A DNA stretch of 64,000 nt from Ranitomeya imitator (Eukaryota). Below the pieces are notes generated by a model. That model ran no database searches, was not told where the DNA came from, and saw nothing but the letters and a program-made list of their open reading frames with translations. The position numbers were made by a program, and so were the translations under genes. Where the stretch lies: contig NC_091283.1 of NCBI RefSeq assembly GCF_032444005.1, forward strand, positions 39,990,001-40,054,000. The letters are read 5' to 3'. Of the stretch, positions 12,341 through 34,321 are shown piece by piece. Within the stretch, counting starts at the first letter, position 1, and every line of letters starts with the position of its first letter.

Positions 12341-12918
12341 CCCACATTTGCGATCGCCGGTAATTAACCATTTACCGGCGATCGCAAAAAAAAAAAAAAA
12401 AACGCGATCTCTTTTTAATTTCTCTGTCCTCCGATGTGATCGCACATCAGAGGACAGAGAAAAGGGGTCCCAGATATCCCCCCGATACTCACCTATCTCC
12501 CCCGGTGCTCCTCGTGGCTCCCGGTGGGCGCCGCCATCTTCAAAATGGCGGGCGCATGCGCAGTGCGCCCGCCGGCCGGCACCGGGAGAATCTTTGGGGT
12601 CTCGGCTGCCGGGGGTAGCCGAGACCCCAAAGAACATGATCGGGGTCGGTTTTACCGACCCCTGTTTTGCGATCGCCGGTAATTAACTGTTTACCGGCGA
12701 CCGCAAAAAAAAATAAAAAATCAAAGTGTAATTCTCTGTCCTCTGATGTGATCGCACATCAGAGGACAGAGAAATAGGGGGATTCAGGGACCCTATTATA
12801 CTTACCGGTGTCCCTGGATCCTCCTGCTGCTCCTCCTGGCTGCCGGGGAAAAGAAAATGGCGGGCGTATGCGTAGTGCGCCCGCCATCTATCGCCATCTG
12901 CCGGCCGACAGGAGAAGA

Positions 12919-13700
12919 GCAGTTGGGGCTAAAATTAGGGTTAGGGCTAGGGTTAGGGTTAGGGCTAGAGTTAGGGTTAGGGTTGGGGCTAAATTTAGGG
13001 TTAGGGTTCTTTCACACTTACGTCGGTACGGAGCCGTCGCAATGCGTCGGCCCGACATACCGACGCACGTTGTGAAAATTGTGCACAACGTGGTCAGAAA
13101 TGGCGGACGCGACGTACAAAAAAACGTTACATTGAACGTTTTTTGTGCCGACGGTCCGCCAAAACACAACTGATCCAGTGCACGACGGACGCGACGTGTG
13201 GCCATCCGTCACGATCCGTCGGCAATACAAGTCTATGGGCAAAAAACGCATCCTGCGGGCACATTTCCAGGATCCGTTTTTTGTCCAAAACGACGGATTG
13301 CGACGGATGCCAAACGACGCAAGTGTGAAAGTAGCCTTAGGGTTAGGGTTGGGGCTAAAGTTAGGGTTAGATTTGGGCTTAGGGTTTGGATTAGAGTTGG
13401 TATTAGGGTTAGGGTTGGCATTAGGGTTACGCTTGGGATTAGGGTTAGGTTTGGGATTAGGGTTAAGGTTAGGGTTGTGATTAGGGGTGTATTGGGATTA
13501 GGGTTAGGTTTGAGGTTAGGGTTGAGATTAGGATTAGGGGTGTGTTGGATTTAGGGTTTTGATTAGGGTTATGGTTAGGGTTCACATTAGGGTTGTTTTG
13601 GGGTAAGGGTTGTGATTATCGTTAGGGTTAGTGATTAGGATTATGGATGAGGTTGGGATTAGGGTTAGGGGTGTGTTGGGGTTAGGGTTGGAGCTAGAAT
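12919..13700 (+). repeat. Degenerate telomere-like (TTAGGG)n array inside the piggyBac-like element
   Basis: Dozens of TTAGGG and variant hexamers, split by a MITE at 13004-13336. Confidence 0.9.
13004..13336. mobile_element. PIF/Harbinger-type MITE
   Basis: tta|GGGTTCTTTCACACTT...AAGTGTGAAAGTAGCC|tta; 3-bp TTA duplication, palindromic body. Confidence 0.8.
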
Positions 13701-13715
13701 TGGGGGGTTTCCACT

Positions 13716-15044
13716 GTTTAGTTACATCAGGGGGTCTCCAAACACGACAGCCAATTTTGCGCTCAAAAAGTCAAATGGTGCTCCCTCCCTTCTGAGCTCT
13801 GCCGTGCGCCCATACAGTGGTTACCCCCACATATGGGGCATCAGCGTACTCGGGATAAATTGGACAACAACTTTTGGGGTCCAATTTCTCCTGTTACCCT
13901 TGTGAAAATAAAAACTTGGGGGCTACAAAATCTTTTTTGTGGAAAAAAAAAATATTTTTTTATTTTCACGACTCTGCATTCTAAACTTCTGTGAAGCACT
14001 TGGGCATTCAAAGTTCTCACCACACATCTAGATAAGTTCCTTGGGGGGTCTAGTTTCCAAAATGGGGTCACTTGAGGGGGGTTACTACTGTTTAGGTACA
14101 TCAGGGGCTCTGCAAAAGCAACATAACGCCCACAGACCATTCTATCTAAGTCTGCATTCCAAAACGGCGCTGCTTCCCTTCCGAGCTCTGCCGTGCGCCC
14201 AAACAGTGGTTTACCCCCACATATGGGGCATCAGCATACTCGGGATAAATTGGACAACAACTTTTGGGGTCCAATTTCTCCTGTTACCCTTGTGAAAATA
14301 AAAACTTGGGGGCTACAAAATCTTTTTTGTGGAAAAAAAAATATTTTTTTATTTTCACGACTCTGCATTCTAAACTTCTGTGAAGCACTTGGGCATTCAA
14401 AGTTCTCACCACACATCTAGATAAGTTCCTTGGGGGGTCTAGTTTCCAAAATGGGGTCACTTGAGGGGGGTTACTACTGTTTAGGTACATCAGGGGCTCT
14501 CCAAACGCGACATGGCGTCCAATCTCAATTCCTGCCAATTCTACATTAAAAAAGTAAAACGGCGCTCCTTCACTTCCAAGCTCTGCGGTGCGCCCAAACA
14601 GTGGTTTACCCCCACATATTGGGTATCGACGTATTCAGGAGAAATCGCACAACAACTTTTGTGGTCTAATTTCTCCTGTTACCCTTGTGAAAATAAGAAT
14701 TTGTGGGCGAAAAGATCATTTTTGTGTAAACAAATGTGATTTTTTATTTTCACGGCTCTACGTTATAAACTTCTGTGAAGCTCCTAGGGGTTTAAAGTGC
14801 TCACCACACATCTAGATAAGTTCCTTAAGGGGTCTAGTTTACAAAATGGTGTCACTTGTGGGGGGTTTCCACTGTTTAGGCACATCAGGGGCTCTCTAAA
14901 CGTGACATGGCGTCCGATCTCAATTCCAGCCAATTCTGTATTGAAAAAGTCAAACGGCGCTCCTTCACTTCTAAGTTCTGCGGTGCGCCCTAACAGTGGT
15001 TTATCCCCACATATGGGGTATTGGAGTATTCAGGAGAAATCGCA
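13716..15044. repeat. About 3.5 tandem ~390-bp internal subunits of the piggyBac-like element
   Basis: cccccacatat(g/t)ggg recurs at ~13826, 14215, 14610 and 15005; first two units nearly identical. Confidence 0.85.
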
Positions 15045-15266
15045 TAACAAAATTTATGAAGACAAACGAACCAAAAAAAGGTAATAAGCCAGCTCACCAT
15101 AGACACAGGTGCACGGAACTCCGTTGCAGGAAATCGGGTGTAGTCCAGAAGAAAAAAAAAGGTTTGAGTTCCAGCTCCATAAAATGCAATCGTTTAATGA
15201 AATCCAACAATTAAAATGAGACATATAACAATGCTCCCTCCGGTGAACAACTCCAAGTGAGGAGCA

Positions 15267-15308
15267 ATAGGCGACGCGTTTCGATGCGGAGATCTTTTTC
15301 AAAGCCAT
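15267..15308 (-). ncRNA. Variant minimal type I hammerhead-like motif in Penelope pLTR (further copies 19022-19058 minus, 19071-19107 plus)
   Basis: GGC-TTTGAAAAA-GAT(CTCCGC)ATC-GAAA-CGCG-TC-GCC; stems I/II and palindromic stem III present, CUGANGA box non-canonical. Confidence 0.55.
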
Positions 15309-15446
15309 ATCTAAATCTGTTTGAGCTTCTCCTATATACTGGGAGCCACCAATCAGATTCAATTCATTCATCACATGACATGACATAGAATCCTGATAAA
15401 AACAATGTGAATCTGTACAGATACGTTTAAAATATTCACTCTATAC

Positions 15447-18035
15447 TCAACAATAATGTAACATGGTTTCTATACGTTTATTTAATCCCTTCGGATGTCT
15501 AGTATTTACATGAAAGATCCAATACGCTTCTCGTGTGAGGAGACGTCTCCTCATATCGCCACCTCTCCGGGGCATATTAACCTGTTCTATAGCCTGGACC
15601 TGAAAACTAGCGGTACTGCGTGCATGGCAAGCTACGAAATGTCTAGAAGCAGCTGATATATTCCTGTTGTTGCCGGTTATATTGTTAATGTCATATAAAT
15701 GCTCCCTAATACGGGTTTTTAATTTCCTAGATGTGCAGCCAATATATGACATATTACATTTGTTGCAATCAATTTTATATACCAAATTTGTGGAGTTACA
15801 ATTTATATACTGTTTAATATTAAAATCAATTGTACCTTCCACATTTTGAAAAGTTTTAGTTACTTTAGCATGCTTACATGTGCCACAATTGTTTGTGCCA
15901 CACCTAAAGAACCCTGTATAGTCCAACCATGTTTTTTTCTTTTCCATTATATGTGGTTGATATAGACTGGGGGAAATTTGGCTTCCTATAGTTGGAGCCC
16001 TCCTTGAGACTATATTTACACCAGATTTTAGAATATTATTAAGTTTATCATCCTCATACAGTACAGGCAAATATTTGTGAATAATATTTTTTATTTCATT
16101 ATATTGAGGACTAAATTGAAAACATATATAAGGTTTATTAACCTGATTTGGATCTGTTTTTCTCACTGCTGTTATTAGATCTTTACGATCTTTTTTTTCC
16201 ACTATTTTTTTTGCTCTATTAATTACCCAATTGGGATATTTGCGATTTTTTAGTTTATTTTCAATCTGTTTGAATTCCCCCTGAAGATCCTGCACTGATG
16301 AACAATTCCTTTTAATTCTGGTGAACTCACCCACCGGGATAGTCTTGATGGTATGTTTACTGTGGCTACTTTGTGCATGCAAAATAGTATTGCCACTAAC
16401 TGGTTTGTGATGAGTTTTAGTGATGACATTCTGCCCAACAGATCCCCTAAGATCCAAATCCAAAAAAGATATCCCAATTTGATCGGTTCTATACGTAAAC
16501 CTGATATTGTAGTGATTACTATTGAGATAGTCCACAAACTGTGGTATGGCAGATACATCACCCTTCCAAATGATGAGGGTATCATCTATGTATCTGCCAT
16601 ACCACAGGATGTCATCCACATAAGGATTCCCGACCGAAAAGACAAATTCCATCTCCCAGAATGACATGACCAGGTTAGCCAGGGAGGGTGAGTACTTAGC
16701 ACCCATGGCCACTCCCACTTTTTGTAAATAAAATTGGCCATCAAATAAAAAGAAATTGTTAGATAGCAAAAATTGAATAACAGTTAACAAATAATTGATT
16801 AGATCCATGGAAAAATTACTAAATCTGGTGAGATGATATTGTGTGGCTTCTAATGCCAACCTATGGGGGATACATGTATAGAGGGAAATAACATCACAAG
16901 ACACCCATGAGTAATTGTCCTGCCATATTTTACCATCCATACTTTTGAGTACTTCCTTGGAATCTTGTATGTATCCAGGAGTGCGCTTTACCAATGGTTG
17001 GAGACATGAATCTACCCACTGGCATAGTTTTTCGTTACACGAGCCTACTCCTGACACTATTGGTCTCATAGGAGGGATCCCCTCTTTTTTATGAATTTTG
17101 GGTACCCCATATATGATAGAAAGAATTGGATTTTCTACCATAATATATTCTATTTGTTTTTTGGTTAGTACTCCTAAATTCTGTCCCTCCTGTATGATAA
17201 GATCCCTTTTCTTTATGATTTCACTGGATGGATTGGATTTCAACTTCTCATATGTGTTAGAATCTGACAATAATTCTTTCATTTTATTATAATAATCAGA
17301 TGTATTTAACACTACTACTACTCCCCCTTTATCAGACATTTTGATGGTAATGTCCGTCATATCTTTCAATTCTCTCAGTGCATTCTTATATCTCTTAGGT
17401 ATGTTGTTATATCTCCTTCAAATGTTATTTTTATTTTCATTATACAGTTGTCTAAGTTCTTTCTCTACACTCTCTTGAAATCGATCCATGCATTCAGATC
17501 TATCTTGCACTGGATAATAGTATGGATTTTTAGTCTCAAAAGCTTGAGAAAAATTAAGTTTTTCAGAATCAGATATCCCCTCTGATTTAAGATCCTGTAG
17601 CATAACCAATGTCGTCTGATCCTTGAAGTCCATGTCCGAAAATTCATTTATTGTACCATTAGGAATAACGTTCTCCATATGTTGGCTTGCATCCTCCAGA
17701 TTCTCTCCCAAAAAATGTTTTTTAATAGTCAGATTTCTGACAAATTTATTTATGTCCATAATGGCTATGAATAGATCAAAATTTTGATCTGGCACAAAGT
17801 TTAAACCCAGGGATAATACCTGGGTCTGATCTGCCGTCAAGGGTCTGGTTGATAAATTAAGTACATTTGTATAGCTATTTATTTCTTGTAAAGCTTCTTG
17901 TTGCGTGTTGTCATCCCTCTGTCGTTTGTGCTTTCTACCCCCCCGCCTCCTGCGTTTTTTGATTGGCGGTGATTGTATTTTGGGGTAGCCGTCCTTTTTT
18001 CGCTGGTAGAAATATCTGATACATTGCTCTGGTTG
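15447..18035 (-). pseudogene. Penelope RT + GIY-YIG endonuclease frame with one in-frame TGA (17418-17420)
   Basis: DVISLYT, GVAMGAKYSP, RYIDD, VYKIDC..YIG; track ORFs 17418-17840 and 15447-17369 share one frame, which is open from ~18035 with no ATG of its own at the start. Confidence 0.85.
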
Positions 18036-18685
18036 TCAGATGAATCTGGGTCTGAAGACGTGAAATAAACATGTGATTTAGTCCTTTTTCTAAAGTTACT
18101 GCGTTTCTGGTGAGACTGACTTTGTTTTAATATGGATCTAGGAGTTCCACTGGCATCTGTCCATTTGCCCCATTCATAGACCACATTGGCTTGGTAATCA
18201 CTGGAATCTCTAGTAAATTTTCTTTTTTTTCGTTCCATAATTAAATCTTCCAATGCTGTCACCTTTTCTTTTATTTTGACCATGGATAGATCATACTGTG
18301 GATCTGTTTTATATTCTGCCAGCATTGAATTCATTTCATCCATTTCTTGTTGGATACTTTGTAGTTTCTTTTCCTCATATTTAATAATCAATTTCATGAG
18401 GTTACAGGAACAATTACTTAGGATAGAGTTCCATTCATCAGAAAACTGTTCAGAATAAATAGTTGTTGGTAGTTCCTTGATACGCAATCCCCTAGGTATC
18501 ATTTCTTTAGCCACATAATTGCTTAAGGTGGTCTGATCCCACCACACTTTTGTTTCCTGTATCATTAAAGTCTCTAGTTTACTGAGATTTTCATTAAGAA
18601 CTTTGTTCTCCATCTGGTCTATCTGCTGATTGGCAAACACCTGTGCAGCTTTTCGTAACCTGTCTCTAGACAGATCTGTAGCCAT
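17879..18685 (-). CDS. Penelope upstream ORF1 (268 aa, helical, basic/Ser-rich tail)
   Basis: ATG ~120 bp after the 5' pLTR; overlaps the RT frame by ~155 nt. Confidence 0.7.
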   Translation of the reverse strand: MATDLSRDRLRKAAQVFANQQIDQMENKVLNENLSKLETLMIQETKVWWDQTTLSNYVAKEMIPRGLRIKELPTTIYSEQFSDEWNSILSNCSCNLMKLIIKYEEKKLQSIQQEMDEMNSMLAEYKTDPQYDLSMVKIKEKVTALEDLIMERKKRKFTRDSSDYQANVVYEWGKWTDASGTPRSILKQSQSHQKRSNFRKRTKSHVYFTSSDPDSSDNQSNVSDISTSEKRTATPKYNHRQSKNAGGGGVESTNDRGMTTRNKKLYKK

Positions 18686-21021
18686 GCTACTATATAGAGT
18701 GAATAAGCGTCCTCACTTGATTAGAAGTAACACCGGTTTAGTGATAATCAACACTGAATATAAGTGTATACAGGGAGCAAAAAATGGGGGCACGGCTATC
18801 CAGCAATATGAAGACAAACGAACCAAAAAAAGGTAATAAGCCAGCTCACCATAGACACAGGTGCACGGAACTCCGTTGCAGGAAATCGGGTGTAGTCCAG
18901 AAGAAAAAAAAAGGTTTGAGTTCCAGCTCCATAAAATGCAATCGTTTAATGAAATCCAACAATTAAAATGAGACATATAATAATGCTCCCTCCGGTGAAC
19001 AACTCCAAGTGAGGAGCAATAGGCGACGCGTTTCGATGCGGAGATCTTTTTCAAAGCCAAGCCATGACATGGCTTTGAAAAAGATCCCCGCATCGAAACG
19101 CGTCGCCTATTGCTCCTCACTTGGAGTTGTTCACCGGAGGGAGCATTGTTATATGTCTCATTTTAATTGTTGGATTTCATTAAACGATTGCATTTTATGG
19201 AGCTGGAACTCAAACCTTTTTTTTTCTTCTTAACAAAATTTATGGTTACATTTCTGTTTTTACACTTGTGAAAATAAAAAAAAATGGTTGTGATTTAAAA
19301 TGTTTGCAAAAATAAGTTAAATGTTCATTTTTTCCTTCCACATTGTTTCAGTTCCTGTGAAGCACGTAAAGGGTTAATAAACGTCTTGAATGTTGTTTTG
19401 AGCACCTTGAGGGGTGTAGTTTTTAGAATGGTGTCACACTTCATTATTTTCTATCACATAGACCCCTCAAAATGACTTCAAATGTGATGTGGTCCCTAAA
19501 AAAAAAGGTATTGTAAAAATGAGAAATTGCTGGTCAACTTTTAACCCTTATAACTCCCTAACAAAAAAAAATTTGTTTCCAAAATTGTGCTGATGTAAAG
19601 TAGACATGTGGGAAATGTTATTTATTAACTATTTTTCTGTGACATATCTCTCTGATTTAAGGGCATAAAAATACAAAGTTTGAAAATTGCAAAATTTTAA
19701 ATTTTTTTGCCATATTTCCGTTTTTTCATAAATAATCGCAAGTAATATCGAAGAAATGTTACCACTAACATGACGTACAATATGTCACGAAAAAACAATC
19801 TCAGAATCATCAGGATTCGTTGAAGCGTTCCAGAGTTATAACCTCATAAAGTGACAGTGGTCAGAATTGCAAAAATTGGCCCGGTCATTAAGTACCAAAT
19901 TGGCTCTGTCACTAAGGGGTTAATACTTGGATACAGCACTCTGTGAACAGCCGGCTTCTATAGCAATGACCTTCTGTGGCTTCCCCTCCTTGTGGAGTGT
20001 GTCAGTGACGCCTTCTGGACATCTGTCAGGTCAGCAGTCTTCCCCATGATTGTGGAGCTACTGAATCAGACTAAATGGCTTTTCTAAACGCTTAGGAGCC
20101 TTTGCAGGTGTTTTTGTTAATTATTCTAATTTACTGAGATAATGACTTTTGGGTTTTCATTGGCTGTAAGCCATAATCATCAACATTAACAGAAATAAAC
20201 ACGTGAAATAGATCACTCTTTTTTGTATTGAAGAACTGAAATAAATTAATTTTTTGATGATATTTTAATTTTGTGAGATGCACCTGTAGATATATACTGC
20301 CACATAATATACAGTACCATAACACTAATGTGCAGAGCCAATACTATACAGTGTCTGCATGCCATGATGTAGTAAACGAATAGTACCTCCATGCCGTGAT
20401 TGAAATTGTTATCTGCACCCCATCTGCCCCCACACAAAAAAAAAAAGTTATCCTCTATTTATAGTTTAGGGGATAATCTGCTAATCCCTGGGACCCCCAG
20501 AAATCCTGACATCAGGGCTTTGGAGTCCCGTCCTGATTGGATCAGAGGTGGGCTCCATGCACGGCCCCCCCCCCCCCCCCTCCCACTCCATTCATTTTCT
20601 ATGGGACTGAAGAGTACAGAGCCCAGCTATTTCCATCAGCCCCATAGACAATAAGGGGAGCTGGGTGATGTTGGGGGGGGCTCTTCGTGTTAGCCTCATT
20701 CAGATATTACCATTTTTCATCAATGTACAGCATCCAATTTTCATCCATTTTTTACCCTAAGTGCGGCATCCATTTTCCCCATATGCAAAGGATCCAAGAA
20801 GTATCGTTTTTCCTTGCGGAGAGTGACATGATAAGCATGTTGAGGTGAGTAGACTTAAAGCCGCAATGCTCCTCTGGGAAATATGCAAATTGTCTCTTCA
20901 GAGAGGAAGAGGACTAGAACTCTAGTGCCACCTATTGGAAGTAGCGATCCTAACAGTCAATGTCGACTCTTTAACGAGCCTTGTCACATGACTTAGGACA
21001 AAAACCAAACCAGAATCTCAA

Positions 21022-21066
21022 TCTGCAGACACTGTGTTTCGGGGCACTGCCCCTCGTCAGTGCAAA
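21022..21066 (-). ncRNA. Type I hammerhead ribozyme
   Basis: TTTGCA-CTGACGA-GGGG(CAGTG)CCCC-GAAAC-ACAGT-GTC-TGCAGA; all core nucleotides canonical, GUC cleavage triplet. Confidence 0.85.
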
Positions 21067-21272
21067 GTGTGAGATCTGGTTTGGCTGATAGGTGGCGCTA
21101 GAGTTCTAGTCATCTTCCTCTCTGAAGAGACAATTTGCATATTTCCCAGAGGAGCATTGCGGCTTTAAGTCTCCTCACCTCGACATGCTTATCATGTCAC
21201 TCTCCACAAGGAGAAACAATACTTCTTGGATCCCGGTCAGACTCCTCTCAATCAGCCAAACCAGATCTCCAC

Positions 21273-21315
21273 TTTGCACTGACGAGGGGCAGTACCCCGA
21301 AACAGTGTCTGTAAA
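21273..21315 (+). ncRNA. Type I hammerhead ribozyme
   Basis: TTTGCA-CTGACGA-GGGG(CAGTA)CCCC-GAAAC-AGT-GTC-TGTAAA; 6-bp stem I, 4-bp stem II, short stem III. Confidence 0.85.
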
Positions 21316-23939
21316 TTGAGATTCTGGTTTGGCTATTATCCTAAGTCATGTGACAAGGCTCGTTAAAGAGTCGACATTGACTGTTAGGATTGCTACTTCC
21401 AATAGGTGGCGCTAGAGTTCTAGTCCTCTTCCTCTCTGAAGAGACAATTTGCATTCCTGATATGCAAAAAAACTCTGACCACTTTATTCACAGAGCCATT
21501 GACCACCATGGGCAAGTTTGATAAAGACTTGGATCCAAATCGGACTTGTCTCATGGGCATGAAAAATGGTCGTATGAACAGGGCCTATGGCAGTGCTGTC
21601 TACAGCATCTATATAGCAGTGACATCTCCAGTAACAGCCACAGAGCCCTGGCAGAGAGGAATAGCCGCTGCTACCTGGCATAAGGCTCCTTACCGAAGAC
21701 TGGAGGGAGTCTCTCCAGTAGAGCATACTCTGTGGCTGACGCTGCCACCTGCTGGCCATATAGTATAAGACTCCTCGTACTACATCCAGTGTATAAAAGT
21801 GCAGAATAACCAGGATCTTAAAGGGGTTTTCTCATGTTTGTTTTGCTGGTCCGTGAGGCACTGTCCGCTCCTAAAGATTTACAGTGCAGGCATACTGAAC
21901 CGGTCATCTTCAGAGCAGCGCTTGCAGACGTTTGCTCCTCAGAGCTCATACCCATCAGCATGAATAAAATTGGTCCGATGTAGCTCCTGAAAAGTCAGAT
22001 GAGTGGCATGCGATTTTCATGCGAGTGTAAGGTGGCCAGGGTGGTATTCGTAGCAACGAGCTGTAGTGTTCCCGCCCCCTGGCGCCCCACAGATGAAATG
22101 CAAAGTCCATTCTGCCACAGCACACTTACAGGCCCTGTCAGATTCCCCTCAGCAGCTGCCATGTCGGCTCCGCATCCATGAGCTCCACAAATCACTTCAG
22201 AGACAGGTCTTTATCCAACAGCTTAACTTTACTAGACCTCAGCGTATTCACCACACGAGCAGCACAATTCACACCGAGCCACTTAGCCTGCACTTTCCCT
22301 GCCTTCCGCGCAGACTCTATTCTTCTGTAACCTTTCTCTCTTTCTTCCTGGCGTTCGCTGTCATACCTCAGGTCAAACTCTGTCCTGTCTGTGCCTTCCT
22401 TTTCCCTGCCATCCGGGCAACCTCTTTGGATAGTCCGTGTCCCATCTGTGCCTTCCACGTCACCAGCTCCCTGTCAGCCCCGGGTTCCAATTGGGAAAGG
22501 CGCCGGTTACGCCATCTCAGCTGCTCCCTCCTCGGTCTTAGACCCCAGACCCTTATTGGGGATGGTCCAGTTGAGCTGGTGCCCGACTGCACTATTCTCC
22601 AGCCTGGGGCCCCTTACTGCCATAGCAGATTTATCCCCATGGCCTGTAAACTGTCTGCTTCACTGCTCCTCACATCTCGCCCTGGGCAGAGCTGCCTGTC
22701 CCACACCTCCCTGCTCTGTAACTCCTTCCATCTGCTTAACCCCTATACTGCCTGTATCAAACTAACACTTCTATCTATTCTATCCTATCTCTATAATGCA
22801 TCATGCCCCTCTCTATTTTAATCCCCTACGGTCCTAAACTGTCCCTAAGCTTACACAATACATAACAAATGCATCACATTACAGTATACACACAATACAG
22901 GAACATTAGAAAACCACACATTACATTAATAAAACATCAGGGTGCCGCACGTAAGACATGTGAACAGCGTCCAGAAGAGAGAAGGCACGTGAGGATCCCC
23001 GCCACCTCCTTACATGAGCACAAACAATCTTTCTAACCTAGCATCTGTCTGACTTCCAAATGCAATTTTAACACAAGTTTTTACATAGAGTAATTCTCTG
23101 TCGTTTAAAGATAGTTTTCAAAGTAAATATTTTTCAACATATATAATTAGTACAGTGCTTGTGTAGCTTACTACAAATAAATTACAGAAAAAAATGACGT
23201 GGAGTCACTGAAAATTTTGTTAAACAGCTGAGGAAATGCAGACAGCTGGGGGCAGATGTTTCTAGCCTGGGAAGGGAGCAATAAACAAGGAGCTTCCCAG
23301 GCTATTAATATCAGCTGACAGCTGTCTTCTTAGCCTTTACTAATTATTAATGTGTGGAGCACCTCTATAATTAATAACCAGCAAAGGCTAGGCAGATAGC
23401 TGCAGGCTGATATTAATATCCTATGAAGGGGCTATGGATATTGGCCCCCTCCTACACTAAAAACATCAGGTCTCAGCCGCGCAATCAGCTAAGATCTCCG
23501 CGAGACACTGATGCTGCACTATGACGCGCAATTCAATGTCTCTGCTGGGCAACTGGGTTATCTGTTATGAAAGGCAATTCAGAATCACAATGGACATGGA
23601 GGTCAGAGCACATACAGTGAACTGACAATAACCCAAAATAATAGAACGAGCTCTGAGACGTGGGAACTCTGCAGACCGCAATCCCTAAGCCTATCAAACC
23701 ACACTAAAGGTAGCCGTGGAGCGCTCCTGACCAGAACCTAGGCGCCTCGTCACAGCCTGAGAAACTAGCTAATCCTGAAGATAGAAAAATAAGCCTACCT
23801 TGCCTCAGAGAAATTCCCCAAAGGAAAAGGCAGCCCCCCACATATAATGACTGTGAGTAAGATGAAAACACAAACATAGAGATGAAACAGATTTAGCAAA
23901 GTGAGGCCCGACTAGCTGAACAGAACGAGGATAGGGAAG

Positions 23940-26900
23940 TGTTGTGAATACTGTGGCTGAATTCACTCCTGTGGTCACAAGTGGTACTGCAGCTTCTGAG
24001 CTTCCTCCCTCAGGTGTTCTGGTGAGCTCGTTAACTGCTTCATTACTTAACTCCGCCTGATGCTGCTATCCTTGCTCCTTGTCAATGTTTCAGTGTTGGA
24101 TCTGAGCTTCTCCTGATTGTTCCTGTGACCTGCTGCTCTGTATAGCTAAGTGCTTTTTGCTTTTTTGTTGCTTTTTTTCTGTCCAGCTTGTCTTTTGTTT
24201 TGCTGGAAGCTCTGAGACGCAAAGGGTGTACCGCCGTGCCGTTAGTTCGGCACGGTGGGTTTTTTTTGCCCCCTTTGCGTGGTTTTGCTTTAGGGTTTTT
24301 TGTAGACTGCAAAGTTCGCTTTACTGTCCTCGCTCTGTCCTAGAATATCGGGCCCCTCTTTGCTGAATCTATTTCATCCCTACGTTTTGTCTTTTCATCT
24401 TACTCACAGTCATTATATGTGGGGGGCTGCCTTTTCCTTTGGGGAATTTCTCTGGGGCAAGTCAGGCCTATTGTTCTATCTTCAGGCTAGCTAGTTTCTT
24501 AGGCTGTGCCGAGTTGCCTAGGTAGTTGTTAGGCGCAATCCACAGCCGCTTTTAGTTGTGTTTAGGATAGGATCAGGTGTGCAGTCTACAGAGTTTCCAC
24601 GTCTCAGAGCTCGTTCTTGTATTTTTGGGTATTTGTCAGATCACTGTGTGCGCTCTGATCGCTAACCACACTGTGTTTCTGGATTGCCTTCATAACACCT
24701 GTCATTAGCTTACATAACAGTACAAGGAGCCTAACTAATGATTCTCAATAGAGGGAAAGAAAAAGTTCTGACATCATTTTTTTTTTTTTTTCTGCTCTGT
24801 GTTCACTTTTTTTTTTCCCCCCTAGACATTTGGGTGATTCTGGACACAGGTGTGGACATGGATATTCAGGGTCTGTGCTCTTCAATGGATAATCTCGTTA
24901 TAAATGTACAAAAAATTCAAGATACTATTGATCAGAAATCTATGTTAGAACCAAGAATTCCTATTCCTGATTTGTTTTTTGGAGATAGAACTAAGTTTCT
25001 AAGTTTCAAAAATAATTGTAAGCTATTTCTGGCCTTGAAACCTCATTCTTCTGGTAATCCTATTCAACAGGTTTTGATTGTTATTTCTTTTTTGCGCGGC
25101 GACCCTCAAGACTGGGCATTTTCTCTTGCGCCAGGAGACCCTGCATTGAGTAGTGTCGATGCGTTTTTCCTGGCGCTCGGATTGCTGTACGATGAGCCTA
25201 ATTCAGTGGATCAGGCTGAGAAAAAGTTGCTGGCTTTGTGCCAGGGTCAGGATGATATAGAAGTATATTGTCAGAAATTTAGGAAATGGTCAGTACTCAC
25301 TCAGTGGAATGAATCTGCGCTGGCAGCTTTGTTCAGAAAGGGTCTCTCTGAGGCTCTTAAGGATGTCATGGTGGGATTTCCTATGCCTGCTGGTTTGAAT
25401 GAGTCTTTGTCTTTGGCCATTCAGATCGGTCGACGCTTGCGCGAGCGTAAATCTGTGCACCATTTGGCGGTACTGCCTGAGGTTAAACCTGAGCCTATGC
25501 AGTGCGATAGGACTATGACTAGAGTTGAACGGCAGGAATACAGACGTCTGAATGGTCTGTGTTTCTACTGTGGTGATTCCACTCATGCTATTTCTGATTG
25601 TCCTAAGCGCACTAAGCGGTCCGCTAGGTCTGCCGTCATTGGTACTGTACAGTCCAAATTCCTTCTGTCCATTACCTTGATATGCTCTTTGTCGTCGTTT
25701 TCTGTCATGGCGTTTGTGGATTCGGGCGCTGCCCTGAATCTGATGGATTTGGATTATGCTAAACGTTGTGGGTTTTTCTTGGAGCCTTTGCGGTGTCCTA
25801 TTCCATTGAGAGGAATTGATGCTACACCTTTGGCCAAGAATAAACCTCAATACTGGGCCCAGCTGACCATGTGCATGGCTCCTGCACATCAGGAAGTTAT
25901 TCGCTTTCTAGTGTTGCATAATCTGCATGATGTGGTCGTGTTGGGGTTGCCATGGCTACAAACCCATAATCCAGTATTGGATTGGAATTCCATGTCGGTA
26001 TCCAGCTGGGGTTGTCAGGGGGTACATGGTGATGTTCCATTTTTGTCGATTTCGTCATCCACCCCTTCTGAGGTCCCAGAGTTCTTGTCGGATTATCAGG
26101 ATGTATTTGAAGAGCCCAAGTCCGATGCCCTACCTCCGCATAGGGATTGTGATTGTGCTATCAATTTGATTCCTGGTAGTAAATTCCCTAAAGGTCGATT
26201 ATTTAATTTATCCGTGCCCGAACACGCCGCTATGCACAGTTATGTGAAGGAATCCCTGGAGAAGGGACATATTCGCCCATCGTCATCACCACTGGGAGCA
26301 GGGTTCTTCTTTGTAGCCAAGAAGGATGATTCGCTGAGACCGTGTATTGATTACCACCTTCTTAATAAGATCACTGTTAAATTTCAGTATCCCTTGCCAT
26401 TGTTATCTGACTTGTTTGCTCGGATTAAGGGGGCTAGTTGGTTCACTAAGATAGATCTTCGTGGTGCGTATAATCTGGTGGGAATCAGGCAAGGAGATGA
26501 ATGGAAAACTGCATTCAATACGCCCGAGGGTCATTTTGAGTATCTAGTGATGCCGTTCGGACTTGCCAATGCTCCATCTGTGTTTCAGTCTTTTATGCAT
26601 GACATCTTCCGTGAGTATCTGGATAAATTCCTGATTGTTTACTTGGATGACATTTTGATCTTCTCAGATGATTGGGAGTCTCATGTGAAGCAGGTCAGAA
26701 TGGTTTTTCAGGTCCTGCGTGCTAACTCTTTGTTTGTGAAGGGATCAAAGTGTCTCTTCGGTGTGCAGAAAGTTTCATTTTTGGGGTTCATCTTTACCCC
26801 TTCTACTATCGAGATGGATCCAGTTAAGGTCCAAGCCATCCAGGATTGGATTCAGCCGACATCTCTGAAAAGTCTGCAAAAGTTCCTGGGCTTTGCTAAT

Positions 26901-29698
26901 TTTTATCGTCCCTTCATCTGTAATTTTTCTAGCATTGCCAAACCATTGACCGATTTGACCAAGAAGGGTGCTGATTTGGTTAATTGGTCTTCTGCTGCTG
27001 TGGAAGCTTTTCAGGAGTTGAAGCGTCGTTTTTGTTCTGCCCCTGTGTTGTGTCAGCCAGATGTTTCTCTTCCGTTCCAGGTCGAGGTTGATGCTTCTGA
27101 GATTGGAGCAGGGGCGGTTTTGTCACAGAGAGGTTCTGATTGCTCAGTGATGAAACCATGTGCTTTCTTTTCCAGGAAGTTTTCGCCCGCTGAGCGTAAT
27201 TATGATGTGGGCAATCGAGAGTTGCTGGCCATGAAGTGGGCATTCGAGGAGTGGCGTCATTGGCTTGAAGGAGCTAAGCATCGCGTGGTGGTATTGACTG
27301 ATCATAAGAACTTGACTTATCTCGAGTCTGCCAAGCGCTTGAATCCTAGACAGGCCCGTTGGTCGTTATTTTTTGCCCGCTTCGACTTTGTGATTTCGTA
27401 CCTTCCGGGCTCTAAAAATGTGAAGGCGGATGCTCTGTCTAGGAGTTTTGTGCCCGACTCTCCGGGTTTATCTGAGCCAGCGGGTATCCTCAAGGAAGGA
27501 GTCATTGTGTCTGCCATCTCCCCTGATTTGCGGCGGGTGCTGCAAAAATTTCAGGCGAATAAACCTGATCGTTGTCCAGCAGAGAAACTGTTCGTCCCTG
27601 ATAGGTGGACTAATAAACTCATCTCTGAACTTCATTGTTCGGTGTTGGCTGGTCATCCTGGAATCTTTGGTACCAGAGAGTTAGTGGCTAGATCCTTCTG
27701 GTGGCCATCTCTGTCACGGGATGTACGTACTTTTGTGCAGTCCTGTGGGATTTGTGCTAGGGCTAAGCCCTGCTGTTCTCGTGCCAGTGGGTTGCTTTTG
27801 CCCTTGCCGGTCCCAAAGAGGCCTTGGACACATATTTCGATGGATTTCATTTCTGACCTTCCCGTTTCTCAAAAGATGTCAGTCATTTGGGTGGTCTGTG
27901 ATCGCTTTTCTAAAATGGTCCATCTGGTGCCCTTGGCTAAATTGCCTTCCTCCTCTGATTTGGTACCTTTGTTCTTTCAGCATGTGGTTCGGTTGCATGG
28001 CATTCCTGAGAATATTGTTTCTGACAGAGGTTCCCAGTTTGTTTCAAGGTTTTGGCGAGCCTTTTGTGGTAGGATGGGCATTGACCTATTCTTTTCCTCG
28101 GCTTTCCATCCTCAGACTAATGGCCAGACCGAACGAACCAATCAGACCTTGGAAACATATCTGAGATGTTTTGTTTCTGCAGACCAGAATGATTGGGTGT
28201 CCTTTTTGCCGTTGGCTGAGTTCGCCCTTAATAATCGGGCCAGCTCGGCTACCTTGGTTTCTCCATTTTTTTGCAATTCTGGGTTCCATCCTCGTTTCTC
28301 TTCAGGACAGGTTGAGTCTTCGGACTGTCCTGGTGTGGATTCTGTGGTGGATAGGTTGCAGCAGATCTGGACTCAGGTAGTGGACAATTTGATCTTGTCC
28401 CAGGAGAAAGCTCAACTTTTCGCTAATCGCAGACGCCGTGTGGGTCCCCGACTTCGTGTTGGGGATCTGGTTTGGTTATCTTCTCGTCATATTCCTATGA
28501 AGGTTTCCTCTCCTAAATTTAAACCTCGTTTTATTGGTCCGTATAGGATTTCTGAGGTTCTCAATCCTGTGTCTTTTCGTTTGACCCTCCCAGACTCCTT
28601 TTCCATACATAATGTATTCCATAGGTCGTTGTTGCGGAGATACGTGGCACCTATGGTTCCATCTGTTGAGCCTCCTGCCTCGGTTTTGGTGGAGGGGGAA
28701 TTGGAGTATATTGTGGAGAAGATTTTGGATTCTCGTGTTTCTAGACGGAAACTCCAGTATCTGGTTAAATGGAAGGGTTATGCTCAGGAAGATAATTCCT
28801 GGGTTTTTGCCTCTGATGTTCATGCTTCCGATCTTGTTCGTGCCTTTCATGCGGCTCATCCTGGTCGGCCTGGGGGCTCTAGTGAGGGTTCGGTGACCCC
28901 TCCTCAAGGGGGGGGTACTGTTGTGAATTCTGTGGCTGAATTCACTCCTGTGGTCACAAGTGGTACTGCAGCTTCTGAGCTTCCTCCCTCAGGTGTTCTG
29001 GTGAGCTCGTTAACTGCTTCATTACTTAACTCCGCCTGATGCTGCTATCCTTGCTCCTTGTCAATGTTTCAGTGTTGGATCTGAGCTTCTCCTGATTGTT
29101 CCTGTGACCTGCTGCTCTGTATAGCTAAGTGCTTTTTGCTTTTTTGTTGCTTTTTTTCTGTCCAGCTTGTCTTTTGTTTTGCTGGAAGCTCTGAGACGCA
29201 AAGGGTGTACCGCCGTGCCGTTAGTTCGGCACGGTGGGGTTTTTTTGCCCCCTTTGCGTGGTTTTGCTTTAGGGTTTTTTGTAGACTGCAAAGTTCGCTT
29301 TACTGTCCTCGCTCTGTCCTAGAATATCGGGCCCCTCTTTGCTGAATCTATTTCATCCCTACGTTTTGTCTTTTCATCTTACTCACAGTCATTATATGTG
29401 GGGGGCTGCCTTTTCCTTTGGGGAATTTCTCTGGGGCAAGTCAGGCCTATTTTTCTATCCTCAGGCTAGCTAGTTTCTTAGGCTGTGCCGAGTTGCCTAG
29501 GTAGTTGTTAGGCGCAATCCACAGCCGCTTTTAGTTGTGTTTAGGATAGGATCAGGTGTGCAGTCTACAGAGTTTCCACGTCTCAGAGCTCGTTCTTGTA
29601 TTTTTGGGTATTTGTCAGATCACTGTGTGCGCTCTGATCGCTAAGCACACTGTGTTTCTGGATTGCCTTCATAACACCTGTCATTAGCTTACATAACA
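23940..29698 (+). mobile_element. Ty3/Gypsy chromodomain LTR retrotransposon B, intact (LTRs 23940-24719 and 28919-29698)
   Basis: 780-bp LTRs with about 5 differences by eye; TSD gggaag; PPT AAGGGGGGGG. Confidence 0.96.
24738..29039 (+). CDS. Single-ORF Gag-PR-RT-RNaseH-IN-chromodomain polyprotein (1433 aa; functional start possibly MDIQG)
   Basis: [27 protein letters not shown] zinc finger, GPY, EYIVEKILDSR...YLVKWKGY. Confidence 0.95.
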   Translation: MILNRGKEKVLTSFFFFFLLCVHFFFSPLDIWVILDTGVDMDIQGLCSSMDNLVINVQKIQDTIDQKSMLEPRIPIPDLFFGDRTKFLSFKNNCKLFLALKPHSSGNPIQQVLIVISFLRGDPQDWAFSLAPGDPALSSVDAFFLALGLLYDEPNSVDQAEKKLLALCQGQDDIEVYCQKFRKWSVLTQWNESALAALFRKGLSEALKDVMVGFPMPAGLNESLSLAIQIGRRLRERKSVHHLAVLPEVKPEPMQCDRTMTRVERQEYRRLNGLCFYCGDSTHAISDCPKRTKRSARSAVIGTVQSKFLLSITLICSLSSFSVMAFVDSGAALNLMDLDYAKRCGFFLEPLRCPIPLRGIDATPLAKNKPQYWAQLTMCMAPAHQEVIRFLVLHNLHDVVVLGLPWLQTHNPVLDWNSMSVSSWGCQGVHGDVPFLSISSSTPSEVPEFLSDYQDVFEEPKSDALPPHRDCDCAINLIPGSKFPKGRLFNLSVPEHAAMHSYVKESLEKGHIRPSSSPLGAGFFFVAKKDDSLRPCIDYHLLNKITVKFQYPLPLLSDLFARIKGASWFTKIDLRGAYNLVGIRQGDEWKTAFNTPEGHFEYLVMPFGLANAPSVFQSFMHDIFREYLDKFLIVYLDDILIFSDDWESHVKQVRMVFQVLRANSLFVKGSKCLFGVQKVSFLGFIFTPSTIEMDPVKVQAIQDWIQPTSLKSLQKFLGFANFYRPFICNFSSIAKPLTDLTKKGADLVNWSSAAVEAFQELKRRFCSAPVLCQPDVSLPFQVEVDASEIGAGAVLSQRGSDCSVMKPCAFFSRKFSPAERNYDVGNRELLAMKWAFEEWRHWLEGAKHRVVVLTDHKNLTYLESAKRLNPRQARWSLFFARFDFVISYLPGSKNVKADALSRSFVPDSPGLSEPAGILKEGVIVSAISPDLRRVLQKFQANKPDRCPAEKLFVPDRWTNKLISELHCSVLAGHPGIFGTRELVARSFWWPSLSRDVRTFVQSCGICARAKPCCSRASGLLLPLPVPKRPWTHISMDFISDLPVSQKMSVIWVVCDRFSKMVHLVPLAKLPSSSDLVPLFFQHVVRLHGIPENIVSDRGSQFVSRFWRAFCGRMGIDLFFSSAFHPQTNGQTERTNQTLETYLRCFVSADQNDWVSFLPLAEFALNNRASSATLVSPFFCNSGFHPRFSSGQVESSDCPGVDSVVDRLQQIWTQVVDNLILSQEKAQLFANRRRRVGPRLRVGDLVWLSSRHIPMKVSSPKFKPRFIGPYRISEVLNPVSFRLTLPDSFSIHNVFHRSLLRRYVAPMVPSVEPPASVLVEGELEYIVEKILDSRVSRRKLQYLVKWKGYAQEDNSWVFASDVHASDLVRAFHAAHPGRPGGSSEGSVTPPQGGGTVVNSVAEFTPVVTSGTAASELPPSGVLVSSLTASLLNSA

Positions 29699-33100: not shown

Positions 33101-34321
33101 TAGCCATGGCAACCCCAACACGACCAAATCATGCAGATTATGCAACACCAGAAAGCGAATAACCTCCTGATGTGCAGGAGCCATGCACATGGTCAGCTGG
33201 GTCCAGTATTGAGGCTTATTCTTGGCCAAAGGTGTAGCATCAATTCCTCTCAATGGAATAGGACACTGCAAGGGCTCCAAGAAAAACCGACAACGCTTAG
33301 CATATTCCAAGTCCATCAAATTCAGGGCAGCGCCTGAATCCACAAATGCCATGACAGAATATGATGACAAAGAGCAGATCAAGGTAACGGACAGAAGAAA
33401 TTTTGACTGTACAGTACCAATGGTGGCAGACCTAGCGAACCGCTTAGTGCGCTTAGGACAATCAGAGATAGCATGAGTGGAATCACCACAGTAGAAACAC
33501 AGACCATTCAGACGTCTGTGTTCTTGCCGTTCAACTCTGGTCAAGGTCCTATCACACTGCATAGGCTCAGATTTAAGCTCAGGTAATACCGCCAAATGGT
33601 GCACAGGTTTACGCTCACGCAAGCGTCGACCGATCTGAATGGCCAAAGACATAGACTCATTCAAACCAGCAGGCATAGGAAATCCCACCATGACATCCTT
33701 AAGGGCTTCAGAGAGACCCTTTCTGAATATTGCTGCCAGCGCAGATTCATTCCATTGAGTGAGCACTGACCACTTTCTAAATTTCTGACAATATACCTCT
33801 ATCTCATCCTGAGCCTGACAAAGAGCCAGCAAATTTTTTTCTGCCTGATCCACTGAATTAGGCTCATCGTACAGCAACCCAAGCGCCAGGAAAAACGCAT
33901 CGATATTACTCAATGCAGGATCTCCTGACGCAAGAGAAAACGCCCAGTCCTGAGGGTCGCCGCGCAAAAAAGAAATGACGATCCTAACCTGTTGAATTGG
34001 GTCACCAGAAGAGCGAGGTTTCAAAGCCAGAAATAGTTTACAATTATTTTTGAAACTCAGAAATTTAATTCTATCTCCAAAAAACAAATCTGGAATAGGA
34101 ATTCTCGGTTCAAGCAAAGAATTCTGGACCACAAAATCTTGAATATTTTGAACTCTTGCCGTGAGCTGATCCACACATGAAGACAGACATTTAATGTCCA
34201 TTGCTACACCTGTGTCCTGAACCACCCAAATGTCTAGGGGAAAAAAAAGACAAAACACAGTGCAAAGAAAAAAAAATGGTCTCAGAACTTCTTTTTTCCC
34301 TCTATTGAGAATCATTAGCAC
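30134..34321 (-). pseudogene. Element A gag-pol with a single in-frame TAA (32567-32569)
   Basis: Gag CX2CX4HX4C, protease FVDSGA, RT YLDD, RNase H, integrase, chromodomain; TAA lies where element B has CAA. Confidence 0.92.

What the first reader, a model, noticed from the sequence alone, without database searches (positions are those of the whole stretch)
20790..21459. 314-nt retrozyme-like unit with canonical hammerhead ribozymes on both strands
Seen: a non-coding 670-bp insertion made of a 314-nt unit (direct repeat at 21088 and 21402) preceded by an inverted copy, between atatgcaaa duplications. It holds two hammerheads with perfect CUGACGA and GAAAC..GUC cores, a GGGG/CCCC stem II and a 6-bp stem I whose substitutions keep pairing (TGTAAA vs TGCAGA). 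Established: newt satellite 2 and metazoan non-LTR retrozymes are small hammerhead-containing units made as circular RNAs and thought to use Penelope-type RT. Inference: an anuran retrozyme-like family copied from a tandem or circular template. Alternative: a rearranged solo Penelope pseudo-LTR. This locus has only one ribozyme per strand, so it could not release a monomer circle by itself.
Basis: partly seen in the sequence, partly recalled or inferred. Interest (0 to 1): 0.8.

Follow-up and report, generated by a model that had tools for sequence, protein, structure and literature searches.

The report
Dead-end hammerhead retrozyme insertion, Penelope-style
This 670-bp stretch is one old, non-coding insertion of a 314-nt hammerhead-ribozyme repeat (an amphibian-type "retrozyme"), laid down as two head-to-head copies in the same way as a full Penelope-like retrotransposon 1.5 kb away; it is a real example of an already described kind of element.

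Summary
Positions 20790-21459 consist of a minus-strand arm (20790-21089, about 297 nt) joined head-to-head to a plus-strand arm (21088-21454, 1.17 units of a 314-nt period). They lie between ATATGCAAA duplications. Each arm carries the same type I hammerhead with a complete catalytic core, a 6-bp helix I, a 4-bp helix II and a 2-3-bp helix III. No such motif appeared in 300 random 64-kb windows.

Rfam gives only a sub-threshold Hammerhead_1 match, for the minus arm (18.8 bits against a cut-off of 34). "Both strands" describes an inverted duplication, not a ribozyme in each polarity of the unit.

Both arms read through the unit junction and the cleavage site, so the template was longer than one unit: an uncleaved multimer or a circle. 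A young Penelope-like element (15055-19230) in the same window has the same layout: partial tandem, inverted head-to-head piece, and a 10-14-bp AT-rich duplication. It shares no sequence with the unit.

Non-LTR retrozymes averaging 316 bp are already reported in all sampled amphibians and attributed to Penelope-like elements. This is therefore a new member of a known kind. The locus itself is inert: there is one ribozyme per strand, the predicted fold does not favour the hammerhead, and a read-through transcript would form a long hairpin. Family-wide copies, circular RNA and cleavage could not be tested.

The parts
20775..20789 (.). Left copy of the target-site duplication. ATATGCAAA at 20781-20789 is an exact match; the 15-nt version matches the right copy at 13 of 15 positions.
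20790..21089 (-). Minus-strand arm: about 297 nt covering unit positions 164->314->1->146. It is nearly one full unit, lacking only positions 147-163. Its 3' end abuts the left flank.
21022..21066 (-). Type I hammerhead of the minus arm: core CUGACGA at 21060-21054, predicted cleavage after C21028, helix III ACA-cag-UGU.
   Evidence: Rfam Hammerhead_1 match at 18.8 bits covering the full model, below the cut-off
21088..21401 (+). One complete 314-nt unit (46% G+C, non-coding). This is the first period of the plus arm.
21402..21454 (+). Start of a second period (53 nt, 98% identical to 21088-21140). It shows the template was longer than one unit.
21273..21315 (+). Type I hammerhead of the plus arm: helix I 21273-78 with 21310-15, core 21279-85, helix II 21286-98, GAA 21299-301, helix III 21302-08, predicted cleavage after C21309.
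21254..21334 (+). Extended helix I. Beyond an internal loop, outer stems lengthen helix I, ending in a 12-bp stem (AGCCAAACCAGA paired with UCUGGUUUGGCU). The 81-nt domain folds at -38.1 kcal/mol (z = -6.3), but with GCACUG paired to CAGUGU instead of forming the hammerhead junction.
21133..21140 (+). Perfect octamer motif ATTTGCAT. It recurs at 21447-21454, where the plus arm ends, and as its complement at 20883-20890. It may be a promoter element; this is a lead only.
   Evidence: newt satellite 2 has an snRNA-type promoter according to PMC2220036
21455..21459 (.). Five bases (TCCTG) between the end of the plus arm and the exact 9-nt duplication. They are either filler or a diverged part of a 15-nt duplication.
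21460..21468 (.). Right copy of the target-site duplication, ATATGCAAA.
15055..19230 (-). Context, not part of the element: a full-length Penelope-like element with the same insertion layout. It has 253-nt pseudo-LTRs that are 100% identical (15055-15307 and 18807-19059), an inverted 166-nt head-to-head piece (19065-19230), a duplication (cat)aaattttgtta, and a reverse transcriptase plus GIY-YIG open reading frame at 15447-17369.

Best explanation
The 670 bp are one retrotransposition product of a non-autonomous, 314-nt element that carries a hammerhead: a metazoan non-LTR retrozyme. The enzyme of a Penelope-like element probably inserted it.

Inferred course:
1. The enzyme cut an AT-rich target (ATATGCAAA) with staggered nicks.
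2. Both freed 3' ends primed reverse transcription of the ribozyme-sense RNA.
3. One cDNA started at unit position 146 and ran 297 nt. The other started at position 53 and ran 367 nt.
4. The two cDNAs met head-to-head at a 2-nt overlap (AT, 21088-21089).

Both cDNAs cross the unit junction and the uncut ribozyme site, and one is longer than a unit. The RNA template was therefore an unprocessed multimer from a tandem master copy, or a religated circle.

In such elements the weak-helix-III hammerhead is thought to cut multimeric transcripts by pairing two ribozymes. A host tRNA ligase then closes the monomers into circles.

This locus is a decayed dead end. It has a single ribozyme per strand, and any read-through transcript would fold into a long hairpin that locks the ribozyme in double-stranded RNA.

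**Shown:** the architecture, the motif, the duplication, the template longer than one unit, and the neighbouring element with the same layout.
**Inferred:** every RNA-level and enzyme-level step.
For: - **Period and arms:**
- **Hammerhead motif:** complete core with a 6-bp helix I, 4-bp helix II and 2-3-bp helix III. This matches the 'canonical metazoan type I' description in PMC4209133 (6 bp, 4 bp, a 1-2-bp stem with a small palindromic loop).
- **Not chance:** 0 hits in 300 random windows.
- **Rfam:** full-length, sub-threshold Hammerhead_1 alignment of the minus-arm motif.
- **Helix III:** it is a near-palindrome (ACAGUGU in one arm, ACACAGUGU in the other) that could pair between two ribozymes.
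- **Unit properties:** 46% G+C and non-coding. The circular fold is -96.8 kcal/mol, z = -4.2, as described for retrozyme circles (PMC7229834).
- **Duplication:** 9-15 bp and AT-rich.
- **Termini:** they are offset by 93 nt within the unit, so they are not terminal inverted repeats of a DNA transposon.
- **Neighbouring element:** the Penelope-like element at 15055-19230 shows a partial tandem, an inverted head-to-head piece and a 10-14-bp AT-rich duplication. Its pseudo-LTRs are 100% identical, so its insertion is recent.
- **Literature on layout and mechanism:** this layout is typical of Penelope-like elements (PMC8557442). A purified Penelope-like protein cleaves and extends both target strands, starts reverse transcription inside the RNA, prefers AT-rich DNA and uses uncleaved RNA (PMC11167929).
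- **Literature on the family:** retrozymes occur in all 7 amphibians sampled, average 316 bp, and are related to pseudo-LTRs (10.64898/2026.07.22.740005).
- **Decay pattern:** the arms differ by 14 substitutions, of which 11 are transitions and 5 are CpG-decay type. This fits one insertion event followed by decay in the genome.
Against: - No second copy of the unit exists in the window or in any collection I could search. The existence of a family and of tandem master copies is therefore assumed.
- The unit has no sequence similarity to the only Penelope-like element at hand or to two related contigs. The partner enzyme is unidentified.
- Rfam's curated threshold is not reached.
- Nearest-neighbour energies favour a competing hairpin, with GCACUG paired to CAGUGU, over both hammerhead forms. 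The single hammerhead scores -4.2 and -7.9 kcal/mol against -15.0 and -16.2 for the hairpin. The double hammerhead scores -20 and -27 against -33 and -44 for the best two-strand fold.
- In the literature only 1 of 9 Xenopus retrozyme dimers cleaved in vitro (10.64898/2026.07.22.740005).
- The exact 9-mer of the duplication also occurs inside the element, so the boundary is less clean than it looks.
Confidence: 0.65

Rival explanations
1. This is a 5'-truncated insertion of an autonomous Penelope-like element. Its pseudo-LTR or 3' untranslated region would itself contain a 314-nt internal tandem repeat with hammerheads. The locus would then be a 'solo pseudo-LTR' rather than an independent non-autonomous family.
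For: The insertion layout is the same as that of the full element in the window. Such elements are usually 5'-truncated and carry hammerheads in their pseudo-LTRs, sometimes in tandem (PMC4209133, PMC8557442). In Xenopus, 24 of 57 retrozyme families match pseudo-LTRs of Penelope-like elements (10.64898/2026.07.22.740005).
Against: Both arms independently show the 314-nt period with no trace of coding sequence. There is no similarity to the neighbouring element or to two related contigs. The hammerhead is the canonical 6/4-bp type linked with retrozymes, not the minimal type usual in vertebrate Penelope-like elements (PMC4209133, PMC7761336).
Confidence: 0.2
2. This is a remnant of a satellite array that was shortened and partly inverted by DNA-level rearrangement, with no retrotransposition into this site.
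For: Retrozyme units do form satellite-like arrays (PMC7229834). The window holds other satellites and telomere-like repeats nearby.
Against: The structure has sharp boundaries and a 9-15-bp flanking duplication. It holds only about 2.1 units. The arms meet head-to-head, as in the neighbouring retrotransposon.
Confidence: 0.07
3. This is a foldback or miniature inverted-repeat DNA transposon that carries a hammerhead-like sequence by chance.
For: It has long inverted arms and a 9-bp duplication.
Against: The termini are not inverted copies of one another. The arms are circular permutations offset by 93 nt, and one arm exceeds a unit. The chance expectation for the motif is below 0.004 per window.
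Confidence: 0.03

Closest known systems
Metazoan non-LTR retrozymes, such as axolotl Rtz331/Rtz353 and the Xenopus families (PMC7229834; bioRxiv 10.64898/2026.07.22.740005)
   Same: The unit size fits: 314 nt here, against 330-350 nt in axolotl and an amphibian mean of 316 bp. The unit is non-coding and below 50% G+C. It has one type I hammerhead per unit with a weak helix III, a highly self-paired predicted circle, and a duplication longer than 4 bp.
   Different: This locus is not a tandem array. It holds 1.17 units plus an inverted arm, so it fails the 'two consecutive units with complete ribozymes' criterion for an active retrozyme. In the wording of Li et al. it would count as a monomer derivative. 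I did not find the head-to-head layout mentioned in the retrozyme papers I searched (term searches). Sequence relatedness to any described family could not be tested.
Penelope-like elements and their pseudo-LTR hammerheads (PMC4209133, PMC8557442, PMC11167929)
   Same: The layout matches: partial tandem plus an inverted 5'-truncated copy, an AT-rich target, a duplication of about 10-15 bp, a hammerhead in the repeated part, and a template RNA left uncut at the ribozyme site.
   Different: There is no reverse transcriptase or GIY-YIG coding sequence. The period is 314 nt rather than 3-4 kb. The hammerhead is the canonical type, not the minimal one. There is no sequence similarity to the element in the window.
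Newt and salamander satellite 2 (Epstein and Gall 1987, recalled from memory; discussed in PMC7229834)
   Same: Both are amphibian repeats of about 330 bp with a type I hammerhead whose short helix III makes it work as a dimer. Satellite 2 has an internal promoter of the snRNA type (PMC2220036), and the unit here has a perfect octamer ATTTGCAT.
   Different: Satellite 2 forms long arrays; this is a dispersed single insertion. Homology could not be tested because no satellite 2 sequence was at hand. A promoter role for the octamer is only a lead.
Viroid-like and HDV-like circular RNAs with ribozymes in both polarities (PMC7936874)
   Same: Both involve hammerhead ribozymes and a presumed circular RNA stage.
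   Different: The unit here has a ribozyme in one polarity only. The second motif is an inverted DNA copy. Nothing suggests RNA-to-RNA replication.
Plant LTR retrozymes (PMC4918200)
   Same: Both are non-autonomous retroelements that carry hammerheads and are spread through circular RNA.
   Different: Plant retrozymes have type III hammerheads inside real LTRs, a primer-binding site and polypurine tract, 4-bp duplications and Ty3/gypsy machinery. None of these features is present here.

Membership tests
Hammerhead ribozyme, type I (Rfam RF00163) | All conserved core nucleotides are present: C3 U4 G5 A6 N7 G8 A9, G12 A13 A14, the A15.1-U16.1 pair, and H17. | tested here: met
   Both arms carry CUGACGA ... 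GAA A..U C.
Hammerhead ribozyme, type I (Rfam RF00163) | Three helices surround the core, with helix I open and helices II and III closed. | tested here: met
   Helix I has 6 bp and is extended by further outer stems, helix II has 4-5 bp, and helix III has 2 bp (plus arm) or 3 bp (minus arm) with a 3-nt loop.
Hammerhead ribozyme, type I (Rfam RF00163) | The match reaches Rfam's gathering score. | tested here: not met
   The window gives no match at gathering thresholds. The minus arm scores 18.8 bits against a cut-off of 34. The plus arm has no Hammerhead_1 match at E up to 10.
Hammerhead ribozyme, type I (Rfam RF00163) | The catalytic fold is the favoured fold, or the RNA is shown to cleave itself. 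| tested here: not met
   The minimum-energy fold pairs GCACUG with CAGUGU. The hammerhead fold is 4.5-8.2 kcal/mol worse in the 81- to 83-nt context, and the double hammerhead is also disfavoured. Cleavage itself cannot be tested here.
Metazoan non-LTR retrozyme | The unit is 150-450 bp, non-coding, below 50% G+C, and has one type I hammerhead. | tested here: met
   The unit is 314 nt with 46% G+C. The longest stop-free run is 69 codons. It carries one hammerhead.
Metazoan non-LTR retrozyme | The locus is a tandem array with at least two consecutive units, each holding a complete hammerhead (the criterion for an active retrozyme). | tested here: not met
   The direct arm holds 1.17 units and there is one hammerhead per strand. 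The template must nevertheless have been longer than one unit.
Metazoan non-LTR retrozyme | The element belongs to a multi-copy family in the genome. | not testable with these tools
   The host genome was not available. No other copy exists in the window or in the metagenome, viral or protein collections.
Metazoan non-LTR retrozyme | The element is expressed as linear and circular RNA of unit length. | not testable with these tools
   No expression data were available. The predicted circle is strongly structured.
Penelope-like element (autonomous, or a truncated copy) | Reverse transcriptase plus GIY-YIG coding sequence, or a remnant of it, is present. | tested here: not met
   A tblastn search with 63 Penelope-like proteins against 20700-21550 gave nothing below E 0.06.
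Penelope-like element (insertion signature) | The insertion is a partial tandem with an inverted 5'-truncated copy at the 5' end, and a duplication at an AT-rich target. | tested here: met
   The pattern is described in PMC8557442 and is seen in the full element at 15055-19230.
Penelope-like element (insertion signature) | The sequence is homologous to the pseudo-LTR of a known Penelope-like element. | tested here: inconclusive
   There is no similarity to the one element in the window or to two related contigs. Repeat libraries such as Repbase or Dfam were not available.
Viroid-like or HDV-like circular RNA | One unit carries self-cleaving ribozymes in both polarities. | tested here: not met
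   The complement of the unit has no hammerhead. The motif on the other strand lies in the inverted arm.

The most novel reading that the evidence does not exclude
The locus may be a direct footprint of a retrozyme RNA, multimeric or circular, integrated by two-strand target-primed reverse transcription of a Penelope-like enzyme. On this reading the retrozyme copies the geometry of its helper's two internal start sites. The 3' ends of the two arms lie 93 nt apart in the retrozyme and 92 nt apart in the neighbouring Penelope-like element, with the minus-strand arm extending further 3' in both. A survey of such head-to-head retrozyme insertions would then give the first structural evidence, rather than only phylogenetic evidence, for who mobilises animal retrozymes and from what template.
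Probability: 0.25. Interest if true: 0.5.

Novelty: new member of a known kind. Interest (0 to 1): 0.3.

Why it matters
Animal retrozymes are thought to be mobilised by Penelope-like elements. The evidence for this is co-occurrence and sequence relatedness of pseudo-LTRs, not the shape of insertions. This locus shows a retrozyme-sized unit inserted with the full Penelope signature: two arms primed from both target strands, a template longer than one unit, and an AT-rich duplication. A young Penelope-like element inserted the same way lies next to it. The template was uncut at the ribozyme site, which fits the in vitro finding that hammerhead cleavage is not needed for insertion. As a single decayed copy, the locus adds an illustrative case rather than new biology.

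Tried and rejected
- **Rfam at gathering thresholds, whole window:** no match. In E-value mode on 851 nt the only match was a chance Whalefall-1 hit.
- **Metagenome scan with the 25-nt ribozyme core:** one hit, L001. It is a high-G+C bacterial contig with its own hammerhead of a different topology and is unrelated.
- **Viral-contig scans:** two scans, with the core and with a 30-mer of the unit, found nothing.
- **Searching protein databases with stop-free translations of the unit,** hoping for spurious gene calls on other copies. The word-index search found nothing. The full HMMER search gave only four weak matches to short stretches (15-44 residues) of much longer proteins, which I take to be compositional.
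- **Looking for the parent element:**
  - The unit does not match the window's Penelope-like element.
  - The unit does not match two related Logan contigs, L002 and L003, and these contigs show no convincing canonical hammerhead.
- **Paralogous empty site for the flanks within the window:** none found.
- **tRNA-like origin:** none.
- **Exact-match look-up of the Ty3/gypsy open reading frame to name the species:** not on record.
- **Supplementary table of the 2026 preprint:** the held file is an oligonucleotide order form with no retrozyme sequences. Coats et al. 1994 is not held.
- **DNA transposon with terminal inverted repeats:** rejected, because the termini are offset by 93 nt within the unit.
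- **Ribozymes of both polarities:** rejected, because the complement of the unit has none.

Full report
**1. What is in the sequence**

Positions 20790-21459 are built from one 314-nt period.
- The plus arm (21088-21454) holds one full unit (21088-21401) and the first 53 nt of a second. That second stretch is 98% identical to the first, at a spacing of 314.
- The minus arm (20790-21089) is the reverse complement of unit positions 164->314->1->146. It amounts to 297 nt of the 314 and crosses the same unit junction.
- The arms meet head-to-head at 21088/21089 with a 2-nt overlap.
- The structure is flanked by ATATGCAAA at 20781-20789 and 21460-21468. The duplication extends to 13 of 15 matches over 15 nt.
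- The unit has 46% G+C and no reading frame longer than 69 codons.
- The region shows no similarity to 63 Penelope-like proteins.
- There is no tRNA-like part and no other copy of the unit in the 64-kb window.

**2. The hammerhead**

Each arm carries the same motif in its own sense.
- The plus arm reads: helix I UUUGCA with UGUAAA, core CUGACGA, helix II GGGG-cagua-CCCC, GAA, helix III AC-agu-GU, and cleavage after C21309.
- The minus arm (21066-21022) has ACA-cag-UGU in helix III, and the 3' strand of helix I reads UGCAGA.
- All invariant positions are present.
- My descriptor scan finds only these two motifs in the window on both strands, and none in 300 random windows of the same dinucleotide make-up.
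- The dimensions match the published description of the canonical metazoan type I hammerhead: 6-bp helix I followed by an internal loop, 4-bp helix II, and a 2-3-bp helix III with a short near-palindromic segment (PMC4209133).

Rfam is less generous.
- Nothing in the window reaches a gathering score.
- The minus-arm motif aligns over the whole Hammerhead_1 model at 18.8 bits, against a cut-off of 34.
- The plus-arm motif, 2 nt shorter in helix III, gets only an 11.9-bit alignment to the RAGATH-1 hammerhead model.

- The two motifs are copies of each other, so the unit has a ribozyme in one polarity only.
- The helix I differences are one-sided transitions to wobble pairs between copies that are 95% identical, so they are weak evidence of selection. 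Nine of the 17 differences between the arms fall in the 90-nt ribozyme region, although none touches the core.
- The predicted minimum-energy fold is not the hammerhead.
  - GCACUG (the end of helix I plus C3-G5) pairs with CAGUGU (helix III).
  - This fold is 8.2 kcal/mol (plus arm) and 4.5 kcal/mol (minus arm) better than the hammerhead fold in the 81- to 83-nt context.
  - A double hammerhead formed by two copies scores -20 and -27 kcal/mol. That is still worse than the best two-strand fold, at -33 and -44 kcal/mol.

These energy models ignore tertiary contacts. The result nevertheless agrees with three published observations:
- amphibian hammerheads cleave poorly as monomers (PMC7229834);
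- only 1 of 9 Xenopus retrozyme dimers cleaved in vitro (10.64898/2026.07.22.740005);
- a hammerhead of a Penelope-like element needed its protein in order to cleave (PMC11167929).

**3. Surroundings**

The window is rich in transposable elements. It holds two Ty3/gypsy copies and two LINE-type reverse transcriptases.

The key neighbour is a full Penelope-like element on the minus strand at 15055-19230.
- The homologues that carry an organism name are mostly from anurans and a salamander, at 32-47% identity across most of the query. One Ranitomeya protein reaches 76% over 19% of the query. The best hit overall is an unnamed Logan protein at 51%.
- In three close homologues scanned, Pfam shows reverse transcriptase plus GIY-YIG.
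- It has 253-nt pseudo-LTRs that are 100% identical.
- It has an inverted 166-nt piece joined head-to-head to its 5' end.
- It has a 10-14-bp AT-rich duplication, (cat)aaattttgtta.

This is the textbook layout of Penelope-like insertions (PMC8557442), and it is the layout of the 670-bp element in miniature. The two share no sequence. The neighbour therefore shows that this kind of machinery has recently been active in the genome. It is not the parent of the 314-nt unit.

**4. How the locus most likely arose**

Both flanks of the element are 3' ends of ribozyme-sense copies. Hence both target strands primed cDNA synthesis on RNA of the same sense. This is what a purified Penelope-like protein does in vitro: it cleaves and extends both strands, starts inside the RNA at sites not homologous to the target, and prefers AT-rich DNA (PMC11167929).
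- One cDNA began at unit position 146 and the other at position 53.
- Both read through the uncut cleavage site (unit position 222/223) and the unit junction, and one is longer than a unit.
- The template was therefore an unprocessed multimer or a religated circle, not a cleaved linear monomer. This fits the in vitro finding that unprocessed RNA is the main substrate (PMC11167929).
- The arms now differ by 14 substitutions, of which 11 are transitions and 5 are of the CpG-decay type, plus two small indels. This fits one event followed by decay in methylated DNA. The insertion is clearly older than the neighbouring element.

**5. What the locus can do now**

Very little.
- A plus-strand transcript has one ribozyme and cannot release a monomer.
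- A transcript through both arms is predicted to fold into a long near-perfect hairpin (-438 kcal/mol, z = -32) in which the ribozyme is paired with its antisense. Such a hairpin could at most feed small-RNA pathways; this is an inference.
- The unit as a circle is predicted to be strongly structured (-96.8 kcal/mol, z = -4.2), as reported for retrozyme circles.

**6. Comparison with what is known**

Non-LTR retrozymes with type I hammerheads, units of 170-400 nt and circular RNAs were described in 2020, including 330- and 350-nt units in the axolotl (PMC7229834).

A 2026 preprint (10.64898/2026.07.22.740005) reports that:
- they occur in all seven amphibians sampled, with a mean consensus length of 316 bp;
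- there are 57 families in Xenopus, with many solitary 'monomer' copies;

The element here fits that class in unit size, composition, ribozyme type and duplication. It fails the 'active' criterion of two consecutive complete units. Its family size, expression and homology could not be tested.

I therefore file it as a decayed, dispersed member of a known kind. The one feature I did not find mentioned in the retrozyme papers I searched is the head-to-head, two-arm insertion layout (term searches). That layout is standard for Penelope-like elements themselves.

**7. Rivals**

- **Truncated Penelope-like element with an internally repetitive 3' end.** This cannot be excluded without the genome (confidence 0.2).
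- **Rearranged satellite remnant (0.07).** The duplication and the sharp boundaries argue against it.
- **Foldback DNA transposon (0.03).** The offset termini and the very low chance expectation for the motif argue against it.

**8. Limits**

No eukaryotic genome, repeat library or expression data were available. All attempts to find further copies failed or hit unrelated sequence. The species was not identified. An amphibian host, probably anuran, is inferred only from transposon protein homologues.

Noticed in passing
window 15055-19230 (minus strand): A full-length Penelope-like element with 100% identical 253-nt pseudo-LTRs, an inverted 166-nt head-to-head piece (19065-19230) and the duplication (cat)aaattttgtta. 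Despite its youth, the coding region is interrupted: there is a frameshift between 17879 and 17840 and an in-frame stop at 17418-17420. Either a defective copy was mobilised in trans, or the region contains an intron.
   Followed up: partly
window 15282-15273 and 19034-19025 (minus strand): The pseudo-LTR of that element carries GAAACGCGUC, the 3' half of a hammerhead with a palindromic helix III. The upstream strand reads UUUGAAAAA instead of CUGANGA. It could be a U3/A8 variant with extra bases or a dead motif. No descriptor or Rfam model matched it.
   Followed up: partly
window 15055/15147 and unit positions 53/146 of 21088-21401: The 3' ends of the two arms lie 92 nt apart in the Penelope-like element and 93 nt apart in the retrozyme-like element. 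In both, the minus-strand arm extends further 3'. The two 'tails' share no sequence. With only two cases this may be coincidence.
   Followed up: partly
window 13772-15054 and 19232-about 19440: A satellite with a period of about 390-395 bp (at least 4 copies, 74-87% identical). The Penelope-like element inserted into it.
   Followed up: no
window 12904-13700: Degenerate arrays resembling the telomeric repeat TTAGGG (6-, 12- and 18-nt spacings). They suggest an interstitial telomeric or subtelomeric setting.
   Followed up: no
window 12347-12885: Two copies of a repeat of about 312-319 bp (about 94% identical), each containing several G+C-rich palindromes and poly-A runs.
   Followed up: no
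window 24738-29039 (+) and 30134-34321 (-): Two Ty3/gypsy elements in opposite orientation. The first has an intact 1433-codon gag-pol frame with a chromodomain. The second is split within the reverse transcriptase.
   Followed up: no
window 44017-45354 (-) and 60490-62487 (+): Two reading frames with strong RVT_1 reverse-transcriptase matches, which I take to be LINE-type rather than Penelope-like.
   Followed up: no
window 21133-21140, 21447-21454, 20883-20890: A perfect octamer motif (ATTTGCAT) in every copy of the unit. The plus arm ends exactly at it, and the target duplication ATATGCAAA is the reverse complement of the unit's TTTGCATAT. The 9-mer occurs 6 times in the window against about 1 expected, and 4 of those are in or beside this element.
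   Followed up: partly
L001 48-72: A bacterial metagenome contig carries a hammerhead whose core and helix II are identical to the frog-like one over 25 nt. Its overall topology is different (helix III open). I take this to be convergence, not homology.
   Followed up: yes
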